IMG/VR virus record: IMGVR_UViG_3300028364_000014
Coordinates: 62,001 to 126,000 of that record
DNA length: 64,000 nucleotides
Direction: 5' to 3' (one strand)
Under the pieces are notes generated by a model. The model had not been told where the DNA came from. It searched no databases and worked only from the letters and a program-made list of their open reading frames with translations. Each line of letters starts with the position of its first letter. Position 1 is the stretch's first letter. The translations under genes were made by a program, and so were the position numbers. This document shows, piece by piece, positions 692 through 23,207 of the stretch.

Positions 692-737
692 TCAATTATC
701 TGTTTGAGCAGGTACACAGGCCTTAAGCTCAAAGCGT

Positions 738-757
738 CGCCTCACTTCGGTGGGGCG
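738..757 (+). other. GC-rich hairpin with UUCG tetraloop
   Basis: cgcctcac-ttcg-gtggggcg, intergenic. Confidence 0.6.
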
Positions 758-814
758 GGTGGCAAAATGGACATTCCGTCCACAATTAAACCGTAATACA
801 TAGGAGATTACACC

Positions 815-2614: not shown

Positions 2615-3220
2615 ATGATAAACAATGCCACTTTTACCCCAAACACTCTTGAAATACTTCCTGAATTCTGTGAACTATCCACCTTAACCTCATCGTTATT
2701 TGGTGATAACAATAGCTTAAGCTTTCAAAGTATTAAACTTAGTGCTGCTATTACCGTAAAAAAAGAGTACTTGGATGATTACTCACTTTCACATGACTGT
2801 AAAGCGTCAATATTGCGACAAACCAGAGACAGGATATCTGTACCAATAATACATTCTAATTTTGACTATGCTCTCAGTCGTGCGAGAGAATTTGATGGTA
2901 AGCTGTATTGTGGTAGCACTAACACAGTACGTTGGCAAGTAGAGTGGATAGAGCTACTTAGTAATTCCACTGGTAATGTGTATAAATTAAAGAGAATTAA
3001 AGACGAGTTACTTTGGCGCATGATGCTTATACAAGTGAATGGTGTGTCTATAGAGGACTCAGGGTTATCCTCGGTTGATTTAGAGGCAGTTCGTATGGAG
3101 CTAATGGATATAATTTACGTAATGTGCTTTCGTTTAAAAGGACATAGAGATAAAGGTAAAGTCTGTCAATCAAGGAAGATGCTTGAAGCGCAGCTCGAAG
3201 ACTTAAATACAGAAGTATAA
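2615..3220 (+). CDS. hypothetical protein
   Basis: ORF with strong RBS. Confidence 0.7.
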   Translation: MINNATFTPNTLEILPEFCELSTLTSSLFGDNNSLSFQSIKLSAAITVKKEYLDDYSLSHDCKASILRQTRDRISVPIIHSNFDYALSRAREFDGKLYCGSTNTVRWQVEWIELLSNSTGNVYKLKRIKDELLWRMMLIQVNGVSIEDSGLSSVDLEAVRMELMDIIYVMCFRLKGHRDKGKVCQSRKMLEAQLEDLNTEV

Positions 3221-3228
3221 TTTAAATA

Positions 3229-3273
3229 TGGGTGCTTGGATAATCCAGGCACCTAAAATCAAGGAGAATTATC
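3229..3273 (+). promoter_or_regulatory. Repeated hairpin+RBS leader module, copy 4
   Basis: tgggtgcttgga-taa-tccaggcaccta then aaatcaaggagaattatc ATG(3274). Confidence 0.75.
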
Positions 3274-3867
3274 ATGGGAGCAGATAGAACTCACCACAAC
3301 GCACACATGAAGAATGAGAATGCAGTAGCTGGAGTACGAATGACTGTTTGGGTTGCAGTGTATGATTTTTACAACCAGATGGGAATAAATTGGGACAATA
3401 TTGATGACTTGGTAAGCCCTTATGAGTATGGTAACACTAGATTCTCAGAAGCTTATCTTCTTCCTTTTTATTTCAAAAACCACTTTAATACGCGTAAAGC
3501 CACACAGATGATAGGATATGCTGGAAGCAATAACAGTCCTCTGGAGTTTCGACTCAAAAGGATGAACCTGCTGAACTTCATTGAGTTAGCCAGAGCACTG
3601 ATGCAAGCCAACATGATTACAAAAAAAGATATTCAAATTATTTTGGAAGCACCTTTCAAAAAGCGTAAAACAACAGGGAGAGGTCCGGAAAGCGGGGGAG
3701 TTTATAAATTCTACGCCAAAACACTTGTTGTTTCTTCCATCAATAAATGGGGAGGATTAAAGAACGCAGCAAGGCAGCTCGAAGTATCCTTGGATGTTGT
3801 TAAGTATTGGAGTACTTTAGTTGTTAAAGATATTAAAGTGAAACCCACCTCATCAGCAAGGAGATAA
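3274..3867 (+). CDS. hypothetical protein with C-terminal helix-turn-helix
   Basis: GGLKNAARQLEVSLDVVKYW is HTH-like. Confidence 0.55.
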   Translation: MGADRTHHNAHMKNENAVAGVRMTVWVAVYDFYNQMGINWDNIDDLVSPYEYGNTRFSEAYLLPFYFKNHFNTRKATQMIGYAGSNNSPLEFRLKRMNLLNFIELARALMQANMITKKDIQIILEAPFKKRKTTGRGPESGGVYKFYAKTLVVSSINKWGGLKNAARQLEVSLDVVKYWSTLVVKDIKVKPTSSARR

Positions 3868-8919: not shown

Positions 8920-9505
8920 CTACTTCCTATTAATGGAGGGTACAGAATTTGTTTACATCAATACCGACTTTTTTTGCTTTTAGTTTATTGTTTAATTATT
9001 ACTCTTGTATCTTATGTAGTACCGACTTTATTTGCTCTTCTTGATCCTGGTTCCCTGGAGTAAGGGGAAAATGATGATTAAGAACGGAACATCTATTTAT
9101 ACCCGCAAATATAAATATACAATAATAAATAATACTAGTAGACTAGATACTAACTAGTACTATATAGTTTAGTACTTAATCTATTGGTATTAAAGTACAC
9201 TAGTATCTATTATATGAGTATCCCTACTAGGACTAAAAAACATAAGATGTATAAAAGAATAAAAATGATTATTTATTGGGTACTGCTAGTTTTGATACTA
9301 GTAAAGTATACTATGAGAATTAAGTATTAATTATATAAAAAGTAAAGGAGTTATCATGGATTTTGAAGAAGCAGTAGAGCAACTAGTAGATGAGTATGGA
9401 TGTCCTGAAAATCAAGCAGAAGATATTAAAGAATTTTTAATTGGCGCAGGAAATATGTATGGTATTGTTGAACTATACGAAGCCAGTCAAAAGGAGAATA
9501 AGTAA

Positions 9506-9787
9506 ATGAAAAATTATGAAGGTTTTATTAAAGTATGGCATCCAGGTAAAGAATTACCTATTAAATTTGAAGGGATGGTCAATCTAATAGTTGATCCAGC
9601 GTGCGACGACGACACCCTAACATTTGAATTTAGAGCTAATATACCTGATGCAAAAGTAACTATAGTATCCGTTCCTACCTATAAATTTATGGTACAATAC
9701 TATGAGGATAACGAACTCAGCGGCGAAGATGATATTATTGATTGTGATCCAGACGACTGGTCTGATGTTCTAGACCTAAAAGCATAA
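9506..9787 (+). CDS. acidic hypothetical protein
   Basis: RBS aaggag, ORF. Confidence 0.65.
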   Translation: MKNYEGFIKVWHPGKELPIKFEGMVNLIVDPACDDDTLTFEFRANIPDAKVTIVSVPTYKFMVQYYEDNELSGEDDIIDCDPDDWSDVLDLKA

Positions 9788-10158
9788 TTTTTAAGTCTTT
9801 ATAATTAGATGAGACTATAAATATAATCTAATATACTTCTGGTTTAAACACCTAAGTATACGTGTTCTTTCATAGAGAACTCTCCTGAATAATAGGGATT
9901 AGTGCTTATAGGTTAAGTACTAGTCCCTATTTCTCCTTTTTAATTTTCCCCTGTTCCTTGTTTATTAATCCAATTAGTAAGAAATCCATCCAGTATAAAT
10001 ACTATGGTATCTGTTTTATTAAGTCCTTTCTCTTTCATATACATCTCCAATAAGGACTTGGTTATATTGTTTATTCTAAATGTTACACTACCTACCGATT
10101 TTTTTTCACTCATAATGTTGCTCCTATTATTACTACTATTATTAAATTACACCGTAAC

Positions 10159-10246
10159 TTACAGTGCATATTACAGTGTCTTACAGTGTATAACCCCCTA
10201 CCTATAGAAAAGTTAGTTAATTCAACTTACAGTGCTATTTACAGTG
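10159..10246. repeat. TTACAGTG direct repeats (5 copies)
   Basis: copies at 10159, 10171, 10181, 10227, 10239. Confidence 0.75.
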
Positions 10247-11199
10247 TAGATTACATTTACTCTAATTTACTCCCAGGGACTAAAACATGATACCCCCATA
10301 GGGGGGATTTGAGCCTTTTCTTACTCACTCACATCTACTGAAATCACTAATAGCTACCATTCATGGGGTTATACGCCTATCTGACCCAGGAGACCGCTTG
10401 TTCAGTATCTTAAACAAAAGAGGGTAAAGTAGAGCTTAGTGCCAGTATCTTTTGGCAAAAACACAAAAGGTGCCGTGATTAAGCTTCATTTTTTAACGAA
10501 ACTCATCGATTGACATCGAAAAGTATCGAATTCGACACAAAATCACTCATATTAGTTAAAAAGGGGGTATAATACCCTATATTGCCGTACTACCCACAGT
10601 GCATATTTGAGCCTTTTGCACACAGAGTTAAGTACTATAATCACTGTATCGCCGCTAATACCAGACCTCTTAGCCGTTTTTAGACAAACCGACAATTGAT
10701 TGAGGAAAAAGAATGAACTTAACCCACCAAATATCTATATCAACAATAACTATAATACTATCATGGATACTAGTAATAATAACCCTACTTCCATATACCA
10801 TTAATAGAGCTAAACCCTTAGTATTAGGCGCTATAGCTCTTGCAATCACTTCTTTCGGAGTACTTATCATATAAGAAGAAAAAGAAAAGGAGAAGACAGT
10901 GAGGAATAGACTAAGAGTGTTGGTACTTAGGGCTTTAGCACTAGAAAGGTCTGAACTAAAGTTATTGATACTTAAACTAATAATACTAGTTTGTATGGTT
11001 TTTATAGTACTATTTAGTTCAATACTAGGTATAACTTATATTATCTATGATATCAAGAGTACCGAGAATAGGGGCTCTCAATCAACTATTGAAATGTGTC
11101 GAAAATTATTATCGAAAAATATTGAAATCGATGAAACGTCGAAAAGTGTGTATTTCGGGCACCTTATAGATGTTAATAGAGATATAAGATAAAGATAAA

Positions 11200-19463: not shown

Positions 19464-20609
19464 ATGGCTGAACATAGATTAGTAACAATTGAAAAAATAA
19501 CTAAAGTTACTGAACATCCAAACGCGGACAAACTTGATATTGTAGATATACAAGGATGGCAATGTGTCACACAAAAAGGAGTATATAAAAAAAATGAAAT
19601 TGTAATATATTTTCATATTGATTCTATATTACCAGTAGACATCGAAAAAAGAATATTTGGTCCCGACGCAAAAATAACATTAAATAAACATAGAATACGT
19701 GCTATAAAAATACGCAGTATGCTTTCTTATGGACTAGTAGTACCGATAAGTCTTTTTAGTGATTTAATTAAAGATGAAAAAGTCAATGATGATGTTACAA
19801 ATATCTTTAAAGTTACAAAATACGAACCTATAATAAATAAAAAGAACATTTTATATGTAAATAGACAGAAAAAAAGATATGAAAATCCAAACTTTAAAAA
19901 AGTAAGAAAACCAGAAAGACTTTCAAACTATAAAGGGTGTTTTGATGGCAAAGAAGTAATGATAACTGAAAAAATCCATGGAACATCATGTAAAGTAGGC
20001 TGGGTTCTAAGACCTAACAATACTTGGAAAGAAAAACTTATTGTTAAACTTTTTGGTAATTATCAATTTGTATATAGAACTATGAAAGTACAATTACAAA
20101 AACATGACACGATCATGGATAAAATTTTAACTAAAATAGGAATAAGAAAATATAAAGGGTATTATAAAGATATAAATCATGGTAATGTTTATGCAAAAAT
20201 GGTTAATCAATATGAATTAAAAGAAATTATTTCATCTGGTTATGAAATAGCGTTTGAAATATATGGGAGTAGAATTCAAAAAAATTATACTTATGGATTA
20301 AAGCATAATGAACATAAAATGGTAGTATATGCAGTAATAAAAGATGGTAAATATTTACCTCCACATGATGCGTATGCTTTCTGTGAAATTCATAAATTAC
20401 CACATGTTCCTATATTATATATAGGCATATTCTCTAATGACGAACTGAATAGATGTACAGTTGGAGTAAGTGTATTAGATCCAAATACAAAAGTAAGAGA
20501 AGGATGTTGTATTGTACCACTAGACGGAAAACCATTATGGATGGGAAAAGAAGTAATGAAATCAATCAATCCATACTATGAACTTAAAAATCAAACAGAA
20601 TATAATTAA
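19464..20609 (+). CDS. RNA ligase, Rnl2/DRB0094 family with N-terminal OB domain
   Basis: HPNADKLD N-terminus, motif I TEKIHGTS, FEIYG..IQKNY, REG, KSINP. Confidence 0.85.
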   Translation: MAEHRLVTIEKITKVTEHPNADKLDIVDIQGWQCVTQKGVYKKNEIVIYFHIDSILPVDIEKRIFGPDAKITLNKHRIRAIKIRSMLSYGLVVPISLFSDLIKDEKVNDDVTNIFKVTKYEPIINKKNILYVNRQKKRYENPNFKKVRKPERLSNYKGCFDGKEVMITEKIHGTSCKVGWVLRPNNTWKEKLIVKLFGNYQFVYRTMKVQLQKHDTIMDKILTKIGIRKYKGYYKDINHGNVYAKMVNQYELKEIISSGYEIAFEIYGSRIQKNYTYGLKHNEHKMVVYAVIKDGKYLPPHDAYAFCEIHKLPHVPILYIGIFSNDELNRCTVGVSVLDPNTKVREGCCIVPLDGKPLWMGKEVMKSINPYYELKNQTEYN

Positions 20610-21168: not shown

Positions 21169-21606
21169 ATGTTTAATAGTAAAAAATTAGTACTATCTCT
21201 ACCAGCACACGAAATAGAATCTGGTGCAGTACAACAAATATCTCAATGTATTGGGGTAGACGTACTTGAAAAATTAGTAATACTACCAGATGTACATCAA
21301 GGATACGATATTCCAATTGGGTCTGTAGCCTTAATAGATGGGTATGTTTGGCCAGGAGCTGTTGGAGTTGATATCGGATGCGGGATGGGAAGTATAAATA
21401 CCCATCACACATTAGAAGAATTGAGTATGTTTAATAAAAATGATCGTATTGAGGTTTTTAAGGAAATACAAAAAATTATTCCTACAGGATATAGCACAGG
21501 AAATGGATATGATTTTAAATCATTTACTAATTATATAAATGATAAAGACTTCAACACTAATGTTATGAGTAGAATGAATATATCTATTGGTACTCTTGGG
21601 GGTGGT
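21169..21606 (+). CDS. rtcB: RtcB RNA ligase, exon 1
   Basis: LPDVHQGYDIPIG, VGVDIGCGM, ends GTLGGG. Confidence 0.9.
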
Positions 21607-21867
21607 AAAATGGTTGCTTCCAGCCCAAGAGGATAATATAAATATACTGAAATCTTTTCTAATTGACTTGGAATCCCACTATAGTAATTATATTGTGGGA
21701 GACAGGGGCGAACCCGAAAGGGACGTTGAGAGACTAAACGAAAAGATATCATCGAAATGGTAAAGCGATAGTCCGAACATCCGGTATAAGGTTTTCCGAA
21801 GCCGGAGAGATAGGCAGAAATGACCTATCCTTTATTTAGATCTATTAAATAAAGTAACAAATAACTG
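21607..21867 (+). ncRNA. group I self-splicing intron (261 nt, no ORF) in rtcB
   Basis: exon ends in U, intron ends in G; R-like gagagactaaacg and S-like aagcgatagtcc; P10 atggtt pairs with exon 2 aatcat; removal restores GTLGGG|NHF in frame. Confidence 0.9.
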
Positions 21868-22557
21868 AATCATTTTCAAAATATTGGAATAAATAATAAA
21901 GGGGAAGTAGGAGTTACTTTACATACAGGAAGTCGTAATCCTGGTAATATAGTAGGTAAATATTGGATGAATAGAGCAAAAAAGGACGGTATAAATTTTA
22001 ATGGTCTATATATGTATCCAATAAACTCTGAACTTGGTCAAGCTTATTATAATGATATGCTATGGGCAATTGATTACGCAGAGTTCAATAGATTTATTAT
22101 TATGAAAAACACTCTTAAACTATTGGGTCTTGATATAAAAAATTATATTAAAGATATGATAAATGAAACTCATAATCATGCAATTCTACTTCCCAATAAT
22201 AAACTTCTCCATAGAAAAGGAGCTACTCAAGCTGAAAAAGGTATAATGGGGGTAATTCCTGCTAATATGAGAGATGGTGTGTATATTACTAAAGGATTGG
22301 GTAATGCAGAATTTCTATCGTCAGCTAGTCACGGCGCTGGTAGAAAATTTTCAAGAACACAAGCAAAAAAGGTTGTGGATTTTGATGCTGTAGTAAATGA
22401 ATTAGAAGAACTAGATATTATTGTTAATATTACTCCTAAAAATAGTGATGAAAATCCAGGAGCATACAAAGACATTAAACACGTATTAAAATTACAAGAT
22501 GGTATTGTTGTAGATATTATTGATCATTTTATACCTAAAATAGTACATATAGGTTAA
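21868..22557 (+). CDS. rtcB: RtcB RNA ligase, exon 2
   Basis: NHF...LHTGSR, HN, HRKGAT, SASHGAGR, DENPGAYKDI; in frame with ORF 21967. Confidence 0.9.
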   Translation, partial: NHFQNIGINNKGEVGVTLHTGSRNPGNIVGKYWMNRAKKDGINFNGLYMYPINSELGQAYYNDMLWAIDYAEFNRFIIMKNTLKLLGLDIKNYIKDMINETHNHAILLPNNKLLHRKGATQAEKGIMGVIPANMRDGVYITKGLGNAEFLSSASHGAGRKFSRTQAKKVVDFDAVVNELEELDIIVNITPKNSDENPGAYKDIKHVLKLQDGIVVDIIDHFIPKIVHIG

Positions 22558-22727: not shown

Positions 22728-23207
22728 ATGTTTTATACTGGTGTAGGAAGTAGAAAAACTCCTCATAATATACTTACATTAATGACTTCAATTGCCCGTA
22801 AAATGAACTGGATGGGATATACTCTTAGAAGCGGTGGGGCAGAAGGTGCCGATAAAGCGTTTGAAGCAGGAGCAGATAATAATAAAAGTATATTTTATGC
22901 AAAAGATGCCACGTCAGAGGCAATGACAATAGCTGGTTCATTTCATCCAGCATGGCACAAATGTAGTAATTTTGCTAAGAAATTACATGGTAGAAACGCA
23001 TTTCAAGTACTAGGCTCACAATTAAACCACCCGTCTATATACTGTATATGTTGGACACCTGATGGGTGTAATAGTCATGCAACTAGACAATTTAGTACTG
23101 GAGGTACAGGTACAGCAATCAGTATCGCTGATGCCCGTGGTATCTATGTAACTAATCTCCAACGACCTGAAGAGTTTAAGAAATGGGCTGACTGGGTAAG
23201 GAAATAG
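22728..23207 (+). CDS. DprA/Smf-like (SLOG superfamily) protein
   Basis: YTGVGSRKTP, LRSGGAEGAD, GGTGTA. Confidence 0.75.
   Translation: MFYTGVGSRKTPHNILTLMTSIARKMNWMGYTLRSGGAEGADKAFEAGADNNKSIFYAKDATSEAMTIAGSFHPAWHKCSNFAKKLHGRNAFQVLGSQLNHPSIYCICWTPDGCNSHATRQFSTGGTGTAISIADARGIYVTNLQRPEEFKKWADWVRK

What the first reader, a model, noticed from the sequence alone, without database searches (positions are those of the whole stretch)
21169..22557. RtcB RNA ligase interrupted at its GGG|NH active-site motif by an ORF-less group I intron
Seen: the two ORF-track fragments join exactly if 21607-21867 is removed (ggt ggt | aat cat ttt), with U at the 5' splice site, terminal G, P7 elements (gagacta / tagtc), an internal guide and P10 (atggtt with aatcat). 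Established: NH here are RtcB metal/GTP-site residues; phage group I introns mostly sit in DNA-metabolism or structural genes and RtcB is better known as an intein host. Inference: unusual host gene; both splicing and RtcB use guanosine nucleotides, so coupling is conceivable. No endonuclease inside, so any mobility is in trans.
Basis: partly seen in the sequence, partly recalled or inferred. Interest (0 to 1): 0.72.

Follow-up and report, generated by a model that had tools for sequence, protein, structure and literature searches.

The report
Self-splicing intron inside phage RtcB ligase
The RNA-repair ligase gene (RtcB) of this uncultured 238-kb lake phage is split, exactly at a catalytic motif, by a 261-base group I self-splicing intron. 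The same intron sits at the same spot in at least 20 other environmental phage RtcB genes, so it is a real but fairly ordinary selfish element in a host gene not reported for group I introns in the papers I could search.

Summary
RtcB (Pfam PF01139) is split into 21169-21606 (146 aa, ends LGGG) and 21868-22557 (229 aa, starts NHF). Removing 21607-21867 gives a 375-aa protein that aligns without a gap to intact 375-377-aa homologues.

The insert is a compact group I intron with no ORF:
- U·G pair at the 5' splice site, terminal G, and P1, P10, P3-P9.2.
- No P2 and no P7.1/P7.2.
- Rfam RF00028 scores it only 19.6 bits (cut-off 50).

Comparative evidence is strong:
- At least 21 distinct RtcB loci (29-67% protein identity to the window's RtcB) carry it at the same codon boundary.
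- On 25 aligned cores, 98.6% of pair cells are paired and 18 of 25 pairs show compensatory changes.
- The guide sequence changes together with synonymous exon changes.
- All 20 junctions read are GGT|AAT.

Relatives carry three unrelated endonuclease genes in the P9.2 or P6 loops, so the window's copy is the ORF-less form of a homing intron. The same core also splits ribonucleotide reductase and major head protein genes, including the reductase of cultured Roseobacter phage CRP-118, where it is not annotated.

No RNA data exist, so splicing is inferred. The proposed GTP coupling has no support. This is a new member of a known kind, of moderate interest.

The parts
21169..21606 (+). RtcB exon 1 (146 aa). 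Holds the PDVHQGYD and DIGCG (Asp/Cys metal ligand) motifs and ends LGGG.
   Evidence: Pfam PF01139 at 5.5e-18; aligned to homologues; motifs checked. The ATG at 21169 matches the MFN start of the homologues.
21593..21606 (+). P1 5' strand, which is the last 14 exon bases. U21606 forms the U·G pair at the 5' splice site.
   Evidence: The U·G pair is present in 10 of 10 sequences, and exon wobble changes are matched by changes in the guide sequence.
21607..21867 (+). Group I intron, 261 nt, with no ORF. Read unspliced, the exon 1 frame stops after 9 codons at TAA 21634-21636.
21611..21615 (+). P10 part of the guide sequence (UGGUU, in the P1 loop). It pairs with the first bases of exon 2, 21868-21872.
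   Evidence: Two of the five pairs (at exon bases 21871-21872) hold in all 10 aligned sequences; the pairs at 21868 and 21870 hold in 9 (the tenth row has a gap) and the pair at 21869 in 6.
21616..21631 (+). P1 3' strand (internal guide sequence).
21632..21652 (+). Single-stranded linker between P1 and P3 with a nearly invariant CUGAAA. There is no P2 hairpin.
   Evidence: Alignments A2 and A3. Locus L007 has only about 10 bases here.
21653..21659 (+). P3 5' strand. Its partner is 21740-21746.
   Evidence: 6 of 7 pairs show compensatory changes.
21667..21706 (+). P4 (21667-21670 with 21703-21706) enclosing P5 (21674-21678 with 21696-21700).
   Evidence: P4 is invariant. P5 has 3 of 4 pairs compensatory.
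21707..21727 (+). P6 and P6a hairpin with a GAAA loop. In relative L005 this loop holds a LAGLIDADG_2 gene.
   Evidence: 5 of 6 pairs compensatory.
21730..21736 (+). P7 5' strand (G-A(bulge)-GACUA), proposed guanosine-binding helix. Its partner is 21769-21774, forming a pseudoknot with P3.
   Evidence: The outer pair is AU, GC or UA and is paired in 10 of 10 sequences. Aligned to the RF00028 P7 consensus.
21740..21746 (+). P3 3' strand.
21747..21762 (+). P8 hairpin, the only hairpin between P3' and P7'. There is therefore no P7.1/P7.2.
   Evidence: All 4 pairs compensatory.
21769..21774 (+). P7 3' strand.
21778..21807 (+). P9 hairpin.
21809..21829 (+). P9.1 hairpin (GAUAGG ... CCUAUC).
21830..21854 (+). 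P9.2 hairpin. Its loop is where most relatives carry a 226-276-aa LAGLIDADG gene; here it is empty.
21867..21867 (+). Terminal G at the 3' splice site.
   Evidence: G in all 21 RtcB introns examined.
21868..22557 (+). RtcB exon 2 (229 aa plus stop). Starts NHF and holds HTGSR, NETHNH and SASHGAGR (the last His aligns with His404 of P. horikoshii RtcB, the GMP-accepting histidine).
   Evidence: Pfam at 1.8e-46.

Best explanation
Bases 21607-21867 are a self-splicing group I intron in the phage's RtcB gene.

Proposed splicing, in the standard two steps:
1. The primary transcript folds so that the last 14 exon bases pair with the guide sequence (P1), with U21606·G21616 marking the 5' splice site. 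A free guanosine bound in P7 attacks after U21606.
2. The first bases of exon 2 dock on the adjacent guide segment (P10). The terminal G21867 replaces the free G in P7, and the exon 1 3'-OH attacks after G21867.

This joins GGU to AAU and restores the 375-aa enzyme with its GGGNHF motif (second-Mn and GTP site). Without splicing, only a 155-aa fragment can be made, because of the stop at 21634-21636, and exon 2 has no start codon of its own at the junction.

The element is a selfish homing intron. Relatives encode endonucleases that would cut intron-less RtcB alleles at this conserved sequence during co-infection, after which repair copies the intron in. The window's copy has no endonuclease gene, so it can spread only with an endonuclease supplied by a co-infecting relative, or by recombination. 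It persists because it splices.

Shown here: exon continuity, the fold, covariation, conserved site, endonuclease-bearing relatives, and conserved catalytic residues in intron-bearing alleles.

Inferred: actual splicing, guanosine dependence, and homing.
For: Exon continuity
- The exons abut with no gap against intact homologues.
- N and H map to Asn202 and His203 of P. horikoshii RtcB (PMC9745838).

Fold and covariation
- RNAalifold on 10 ORF-less homologues recovers P1, P3, P4, P5, P6, P6a, P8, P9 and P9.1. Of 59 pairs, 33 are compensatory.
- The P7 pseudoknot's outer pair covaries through AU, GC and UA in 10 of 10 sequences; the U·G pair is present in 10 of 10.
- On 25 RtcB-hosted cores, 98.6% of pair cells are paired, against 74.9% when shuffled and about 50% when slid. 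18 of 25 pairs are compensatory. The covariation score is 0.677 against 0.223, reached by 0 of 500 shuffles.
- The single-sequence MFE fold gives the same helices, z = -4.27.
- RF00028 aligns end to end with the P7, J8/7 and J6/7 consensus.

Conserved site and function
- At least 21 RtcB loci have the intron at the same boundary, and all end in G.
- 20 of 20 junctions are GGT|AAT. Four intron-less alleles use GGA, GGT or GGC with AAT or AAC.
- Both exon frames are open wherever the contig allows, NHF/NHY and H[ST]GSR are present in all 21 intron-bearing alleles, and DxxCG and HGAGR in all but two and one of them.

Mobility
- Endonuclease genes sit in the same intron elsewhere: LAGLIDADG in P9.2 (eight loci, 38-48% identical to each other), LAGLIDADG_2 in P6, and a protein with an I-TevI-type zinc finger and weak Vsr/DUF559-like matches.

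Not an artefact
- The intron is present, identical, in contigs from three other DNA runs.
Against: - There is no RNA evidence. No RNA run was listed, so no spliced junction has been seen.
- RF00028 scores 19.6 bits, below its cut-off of 50. It is not reported at gathering threshold in the window, nor at E <= 1 in the whole genome.
- The intron lacks P2 and the P7.1/P7.2 hairpins of the classical phage IA2 introns, so splicing efficiency without protein help is unknown.
- No intron-less allele of this same phage was found in the runs examined, so recent mobility is not shown.
Confidence: 0.9

Rival explanations
1. The insert is a decayed, splicing-dead group I remnant, and RtcB in this phage is a pseudogene.
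For: The intron has no endonuclease gene. RF00028 scores below its cut-off. There is no RNA evidence.
Against: All core helices are intact and fit the family covariation. The custom model scores the window copy 127 bits, in the middle of the family range. The U·G pair, the terminal G and P10 are intact. Both exons are open and keep every catalytic motif. The same arrangement is kept in more than 20 diverged lineages.
Confidence: 0.04
2. Splicing is a regulatory gate. The need for guanosine, or conditional folding, would tie RtcB production to the cell's GTP or RNA-damage state, so the intron would be co-opted rather than merely selfish.
For: Only circumstantial. Both reactions use guanosine nucleotides. 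The intron lies in an RNA-repair neighbourhood, with a second RNA ligase at 19464-20609. The ORF-less form is stably kept.
Against: The same intron core sits equally in ribonucleotide reductase and major head protein genes, so nothing is specific to RtcB. Insertion at a conserved catalytic motif is what endonuclease target choice predicts. Close RtcB relatives do without the intron. No extra sensor element is present in the 261 nt.
Confidence: 0.05
3. The gene is a true two-piece gene, or the insert is removed at the protein level (an intein) or skipped by the ribosome, without RNA splicing.
For: RtcB is a known intein host. Split phage reductase genes that assemble from separate pieces are known (PMC3045599, listed).
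Against: The insert has an in-frame stop after 9 codons, so it cannot be an intein. Exon 2 has no start codon at NHF; the first ATG, at 21967, would lose NHF and HTGSR. A 261-nt ribosomal bypass has no precedent. The RNA fold and covariation would be left unexplained.
Confidence: 0.01

Closest known systems
Classical phage group I introns (T4 td/nrdB/nrdD, SPO1 DNA polymerase, Twort orf142 and nrdE; subgroup IA2)
   Same: A self-splicing group I intron in a conserved phage gene, at a catalytic motif, often with a homing endonuclease gene in a peripheral loop. The 3' domain (P9.1 hairpin GAUAGG..CCUAUC, then GUAACA...G) resembles my recollection of the Twort intron. The custom core model R1 gives its only weak classical match inside a Twort orf142 intron (19.4 bits, E = 0.044).
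   Different: There is no P2 and no P7.1/P7.2, and only one hairpin (P8) between P3' and P7'. R1 finds nothing in T4 or SPO1. RF00028 scores the Twort introns 64-101 bits but this class below its cut-off. The host gene, RtcB, is not among the reported hosts in the papers searched.
The same intron class in ribonucleotide reductase and major head protein genes of environmental phages, including cultured Roseobacter phage CRP-118 (reductase gp44/gp45)
   Same: Same core: the ATTGACTTGGAA / GACAGGG / GAGAGACT / AGTCCGA blocks. R1 scores the CRP-118 reductase intron 106.7 bits, L184 (reductase) 107 bits and L093 (head protein) 102 bits, against 127 bits for the window.
   Different: The host gene and guide sequence differ: the reductase is split at TNP|C and the head protein near ..LIDLE. 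In a tree of cores, 20 of 23 RtcB introns group together with weak support, and three sit inside a head-protein-hosted clade. The CRP-118 genome paper does not mention an intron.
RtcB inteins (archaea, actinobacteriophages, Anaeramoeba)
   Same: A selfish splicing element with a homing endonuclease that targets a conserved active-site motif of RtcB.
   Different: Inteins splice at the protein level and sit elsewhere. The one site given in the papers read is FGST/CHGE, in Anaeramoeba RtcB, which by its CHG motif corresponds to the SASHGAGR motif near the C-terminal end of exon 2 here. This element splices at the RNA level, between the equivalents of Gly201 and Asn202, and contains in-frame stops.
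Group I introns of jumbo gut (Jug) phages (PMC12880540)
   Same: Many short (about 206 nt), mostly ORF-less group I introns split essential jumbo-phage genes. Splicing was confirmed by metatranscriptomes for 37 of 76 predicted introns.
   Different: RtcB is not mentioned in that paper's main text. This phage has a single detectable intron of this class, not about 18.

Membership tests
Group I self-splicing intron | P1 helix between the end of the 5' exon and an internal guide sequence, with a U·G pair at the splice site | tested here: met
   U21606·G21616. The U·G pair is present in 10 of 10 sequences, and the guide sequence covaries with exon wobble bases. T precedes the intron in 20 of 20 RtcB introns.
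Group I self-splicing intron | Terminal G at the 3' end of the intron, and P10 pairing with the 3' exon | tested here: met
   G is the last base in all 21 introns. P10 is UGGUU with AAUCA; its five pairs hold in 6 to 10 of the 10 aligned sequences.
Group I self-splicing intron | Conserved core of the P4-P6 and P3-P8 domains, supported by covariation | tested here: met
   98.6% of pair cells paired; 18 of 25 pairs compensatory; 0 of 500 shuffles reach the observed score.
Group I self-splicing intron | P7 helix (guanosine site) forming a pseudoknot with P3 | tested here: met
   G-A(bulge)-GACUA with UAGUCC. The outer pair is AU, GC or UA in 10 of 10 sequences. Aligned to the RF00028 P7.
Group I self-splicing intron | Score at or above the Rfam RF00028 gathering cut-off (50 bits) | tested here: not met
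   19.6 bits, E = 0.009 in a 451-nt search. Nothing at gathering threshold or at E <= 1 in the genome. Other members of the class are missed too. This is a limit of the model, not of the fold.
Group I self-splicing intron | Guanosine-dependent self-splicing that gives precisely ligated exons | not testable with these tools
   No RNA run was listed. Precise restoration of the reading frame is shown only in silico.
Subgroup IA2 (T4 and Twort type) | P7.1 and P7.2 hairpins between P3' and P8. This criterion is recalled from Michel & Westhof 1990, not checked in a paper here. | tested here: not met
   Only one hairpin of about 16 nt lies between P3' (21740-21746) and P7' (21769-21774). R1 gives no match in T4 or SPO1. 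The subgroup is left unassigned.
Mobile (homing) group I intron | Encodes its own homing endonuclease | tested here: not met
   No ORF with any Pfam match lies in 21607-21867. Relatives at the same site do encode them.
RtcB 3'-phosphate/5'-OH RNA ligase (PF01139) | Pfam match above the cut-off, plus the metal, GTP and GMP-accepting residues (Asp95, Cys98, Asn202, His203, His234, His329, His404 in P. horikoshii numbering) | tested here: met
   Both pieces score above the 27-bit cut-off. DIGCG, NHF, HTGSR, NETHNH and SASHGAGR are all present. Residue roles come from PMC9745838.
Intein | An in-frame, stop-free insert with Hint splicing motifs | tested here: not met
   The frame stops at TAA 21634-21636, 9 codons into the insert. 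The ORFs inside it have no Pfam match.

The most novel reading that the evidence does not exclude
The intron is more than a passenger. Because RtcB cannot be made without splicing, the phage would use guanosine-dependent or folding-dependent splicing as a timer or sensor. This would delay or tune production of its RNA-repair ligase according to the GTP or RNA-damage state of the infected cell. The ligase could in turn act on RNAs cut by the phage's own pistol ribozyme at 698-764, which leaves the end types that RtcB seals. The evidence does not exclude this, but nothing specific supports it.
Probability: 0.05. Interest if true: 0.75.

Novelty: new member of a known kind. Interest (0 to 1): 0.45.

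Why it matters
- It adds RtcB, an RNA-repair enzyme, to the list of phage genes invaded by group I introns. It also defines a recurrent homing site, between the equivalents of Gly201 and Asn202, that differs from the RtcB intein site given in the papers read.
- Gene callers split such genes into two 'RtcB' fragments, so the finding corrects the annotation of this and many metagenomic phage genes.
- It exposes an abundant, compact intron class (no P2, no P7.1/P7.2). That class falls below the Rfam RF00028 cut-off and is unannotated even in a cultured phage, CRP-118.
- The family offers natural examples of one ribozyme core retargeted to three genes and colonised by three unrelated endonuclease types. 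That is useful for studying intron and endonuclease evolution, and as a source of small ribozymes.

Tried and rejected
- Rfam at gathering threshold over the window found only a pistol ribozyme and no intron. RF00028 over the whole genome at E <= 1 found nothing. Rfam on relatives L001, L003 and L004 found nothing.
- An exact 20-mer from J8/7-P7' had no match in viral contigs.
- A protein-based locus search in viral contigs confirmed no relative.
- blastn of the gene region against cultured phages found no match. blastn of the intron alone found only a 26-nt match to Lysinibacillus phages LysYB1 and LysYB2. That match lies just 3' of an unannotated intron after the major capsid gene which RF00028 detects; the custom model does not detect it.
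- L006 looked like a split RtcB, but its two ORFs overlap (a frameshift) with no insert.
- Rhodococcus phage Weasels2 RtcB is intact. Gut-phage scaffold MT835597 has no match to the model.
- No RNA sequencing run was listed. DNA runs showed no intron-less form of this phage.
- The regex and the custom model found no second intron of this class in the 237,910-bp genome.
- The scan of cellular genomes gave six hits, all in metagenome-assembled genomes. At least five are in reductase genes and none is in RtcB.
- Comparing intron and exon identities was only weakly informative, because global alignment saturates near 70%.
- I did not fold or search the joined protein, because the tools take only unaltered window sequences; the pieces were searched apart.
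- Subgroup assignment was not possible, since no subgroup-specific models are available here.
Full report
**1. The observation**

The window is bases 62001-126000 of a 237,910-bp, 32.8% G+C uncultured virus record. Its completeness is estimated at 87%. It is held by lake-water and salt-lake DNA metagenomes.

Two adjacent ORFs on the + strand both match Pfam RtcB PF01139:
- 21169-21606 (146 aa) scores 5.5e-18 over profile positions 11-86.
- 21868-22554 (229 aa) scores 1.8e-46 over positions 172-412.

Exon 1 ends ...IGTLGGG and exon 2 begins NHFQNIG. Aligned with intact 375-377-aa homologues (P0002 at 63% identity, P0005, P0009 and others), the two pieces abut at LGTLGGG|NHF with no gap or overlap.

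A profile alignment to solved structures places N and H at Asn202 and His203 of Pyrococcus horikoshii RtcB. His203 is a ligand of the second Mn ion. Asn202 hydrogen-bonds the GTP phosphates (PMC9745838).

Read unspliced, the exon 1 frame stops 9 codons into the insert, at TAA 21634-21636. The first ATG in the exon 2 frame is at 21967, past both NHF and HTGSR.

Contigs from three other DNA runs cover both junctions with no differences, so the insert is not an assembly artefact.

**2. What the 261-nt insert is**

Rfam does not report it at gathering threshold. A permissive local search gives RF00028 at 19.6 bits against a cut-off of 50, with E = 0.009. That match is an end-to-end alignment that picks out P3, P4-P6, P7 and J8/7.

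The elements in window coordinates:

| Element | Coordinates | Note |
|---|---|---|
| P1 | 21593-21606 with 21616-21631 | U21606·G21616 at the splice site |
| P10 | 21611-21615 with 21868-21872 | |
| P3 | 21653-21659 with 21740-21746 | |
| P4 | 21667-21670 with 21703-21706 | |
| P5 | 21674-21678 with 21696-21700 | |
| P6/P6a | 21707-21727 | GAAA loop |
| P7 | 21730-21736 with 21769-21774 | bulged A; pseudoknot with P3 |
| P8 | 21747-21762 | |
| P9 | 21778-21807 | |
| P9.1 | 21809-21829 | |
| P9.2 | 21830-21854 | |
| Terminal G | 21867 | |

There is no P2. A 21-nt linker with a nearly invariant CUGAAA joins P1 to P3. There is also no P7.1/P7.2. The minimum-free-energy fold of the single sequence gives the same helices, with z = -4.27.

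**3. Relatives settle it**

The homologue search returned short (181-240 aa) as well as full-length RtcB proteins. Their contigs show the same insert at the same place:
- Without an ORF: L001-L003.
- With a LAGLIDADG gene in the P9.2 loop: L004, L007, L008.
- With a LAGLIDADG_2 gene in the P6 loop: L005.

A tblastn search of the window's exons against all fetched loci found more RtcB hosts. Wherever exon 2 aligned from its N-terminus, it began at the N of NHF, including RtcB proteins only about 29% identical to the window's.

I mapped 21 RtcB introns precisely:
- All 21 end in G.
- All 20 junctions read are GGT|AAT.
- Four intron-less alleles use GGA, GGT or GGC with AAT or AAC.
- Both exon frames are open wherever the contig allows. 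NHF/NHY and H[ST]GSR are present in all 21; DxxCG was not matched in two and HGAGR in one, where the contig ends.

Keeping a working enzyme in so many lineages implies that the insert is removed.

**4. Covariation**

RNAalifold on 10 ORF-less introns with short exon flanks predicts 59 pairs, of which 33 show compensatory changes. It recovers P1, P3, P4, P5, P6, P6a, P8, P9 and P9.1.

The guide sequence changes together with synonymous changes in the Gly, Leu and Thr codons of the exon. P7, which RNAalifold cannot draw because it is a pseudoknot, has an outer pair that is AU, GC or UA and is paired in 10 of 10 sequences.

A covariance model of the P3-to-P7' core (R1) aligned 25 RtcB-hosted copies. 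On that alignment:
- 98.6% of pair cells form a standard pair, against 74.9% after shuffling and about 50% when partners are slid.
- 18 of 25 pairs show compensatory changes.
- The covariation score is 0.677 against 0.223, reached by 0 of 500 shuffles.

An alignment fitted to the model leans towards that structure. The independent MAFFT and RNAalifold result agrees with it.

**5. Mobility**

Three unrelated endonuclease types occupy this intron in RtcB:
- A 226-276-aa double-motif LAGLIDADG in P9.2, in eight loci that are 38-48% identical to each other. In L004, L007, L126 and L223 the ORF ends one base past the 3' splice site.
- A 211-aa LAGLIDADG_2 in P6 (L005).
- A 276-aa protein in L026, with a 96-aa relative in L164. 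It has an I-TevI-type zinc finger (29.5 bits, above the cut-off), and below-cut-off NUMOD3 and Vsr/DUF559-like matches.

The P9.2 stem of the window's intron matches that of L004, whose loop holds the gene. The window therefore carries the ORF-less form. No intron-less form of this phage was seen in the runs examined, so current mobility is not shown.

**6. Wider context**

By all-against-all blastp of the upstream reading frames, the 186 distinct core-pattern hits fall into three main host genes:
- The ribonucleotide reductase large subunit, split at TNP|C (93 of 186).
- A major head protein (33 of 186; phrog_1357).
- RtcB (24 of 186).

A motif-based count of the 142 cores short enough to extract labelled fewer of them (37 reductase, 20 head protein, 23 RtcB, 62 unassigned).

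In a tree of cores, 20 of 23 RtcB introns group together with weak support. Three (L026, L062, L194) sit inside a head-protein-hosted clade with 100/99 support. This hints at more than one entry into RtcB, but the tree rests on only 132 columns.

In about 185,000 species-representative cellular genomes the pattern occurs only six times. All six are metagenome-assembled genomes, at least five of the hits are in reductase genes, and none is in RtcB.

Tests against classical phage introns and cultured phages:
- R1 finds no second copy in the window's own genome.
- R1 does not recognise the T4 or SPO1 introns. It touches a Twort orf142 intron only weakly (19.4 bits, E = 0.044).
- RF00028 detects the Twort introns (64-101 bits) and a Lysinibacillus phage capsid-gene intron (58 bits), but not this class.
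- One cultured phage has the class. Roseobacter phage CRP-118 has its reductase annotated as two CDSs (gp44, gp45), and R1 scores 106.7 bits between them. Its genome paper does not mention an intron.

**7. Literature**

Full-text searches combining RtcB with group I intron, homing endonuclease and phage found no report of an intron inside rtcB. RtcB is reported as an intein host; the one insertion site given in the papers read lies elsewhere, at FGST/CHGE. Frequent short group I introns in jumbo phages, validated by metatranscriptomes, are already published (PMC12880540). A 42,459-intron database exists whose host-gene table I could not query (PMC11835236). 'Not found in the searched literature' is as far as I can go.

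**8. Mechanism and rivals**

The best explanation (confidence about 0.9) is a conventional two-step, guanosine-initiated self-splicing intron that restores RtcB. It is kept as a selfish homing element whose endonuclease has been lost here.

The rivals are:
- A dead remnant or pseudogene (about 0.04). The intact core and exons argue against it.
- A regulatory gate linked to GTP (about 0.05). It is not excluded, but the same core in reductase and capsid genes and the existence of intron-less relatives argue against anything specific to RtcB.
- Protein-level or two-piece solutions (about 0.01). The in-frame stop and the missing start codon rule these out.

**9. Verdict**

It is a new member of a known kind: a new host gene and homing site, in an abundant intron class that standard models miss. 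It is of moderate interest. Direct proof of splicing is still missing.

Noticed in passing
window 698-764 (+): Pistol self-cleaving ribozyme (Rfam RF02679, 49 bits against a cut-off of 34.5). It lies between two + strand ORFs (17-691 and 815-1420), so it would cut a polycistronic transcript. Pistol cleavage leaves a 2',3'-cyclic phosphate and a 5'-OH, which are the ends RtcB seals. A link to the RtcB gene 20 kb away is speculation only.
   Followed up: partly
window 19464-20609 (+): A second, unrelated RNA ligase lies 560 bp upstream of RtcB (Pfam RNA_ligase PF09414 plus the PHA02142 OB-fold; phrog_968). Together they suggest an RNA-repair module. No tRNA genes are in the window.
   Followed up: partly
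window 22728-23207 (+): A DprA-like protein (phrog_768, 6e-50) lies just downstream of RtcB.
   Followed up: no
L269 (Roseobacter phage CRP-118, OR420741.1 35056-35455): The class II ribonucleotide reductase of this cultured phage is annotated as two CDSs (gp44, gp45). An intron of the same class lies between them (R1 106.7 bits). It is not annotated, and the genome paper does not mention it.
   Followed up: partly
L261 (Lysinibacillus phage LysYB2, OP628076.1), locus 2216-2503: An unannotated group I intron (RF00028, 58 bits) starts at the 3' end of the annotated major capsid CDS (906-2267), with an HNH nuclease gene after it (2719-3342). A 26-nt stretch just 3' of the RF00028 match (locus 2501-2526) is identical to the P9.1-P9.2 region of the window's intron.
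   Followed up: partly
L004 2954-2956; L007 3002-3004; also L126 and L223: The stop codon of the intron-encoded LAGLIDADG gene straddles the 3' splice site (in L004 and L007 the TGA uses the terminal G and the first exon base). The end of the endonuclease ORF therefore overlaps the P9.2 3' strand and the splice site.
   Followed up: partly
L093 (viral contig), 8995-10710 (-): Besides the strong head-protein intron (102 bits), three further weak R1 matches (21-28 bits) lie within 1.7 kb. There may be several introns in or near one capsid gene. L039 also has two exact core-pattern matches 245 bp apart.
   Followed up: no
L006 60-1173: This RtcB homologue is called as two overlapping ORFs with no insert. 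It is a frameshift or sequencing error, not an intron.
   Followed up: partly
L026 782-1609; L164: A third endonuclease type occupies RtcB-site introns. It has an I-TevI-type zinc finger (above the Pfam cut-off), plus NUMOD3 and Vsr/DUF559-like nuclease matches below their cut-offs. L164 holds only a 96-aa relative, possibly a decaying copy.
   Followed up: partly
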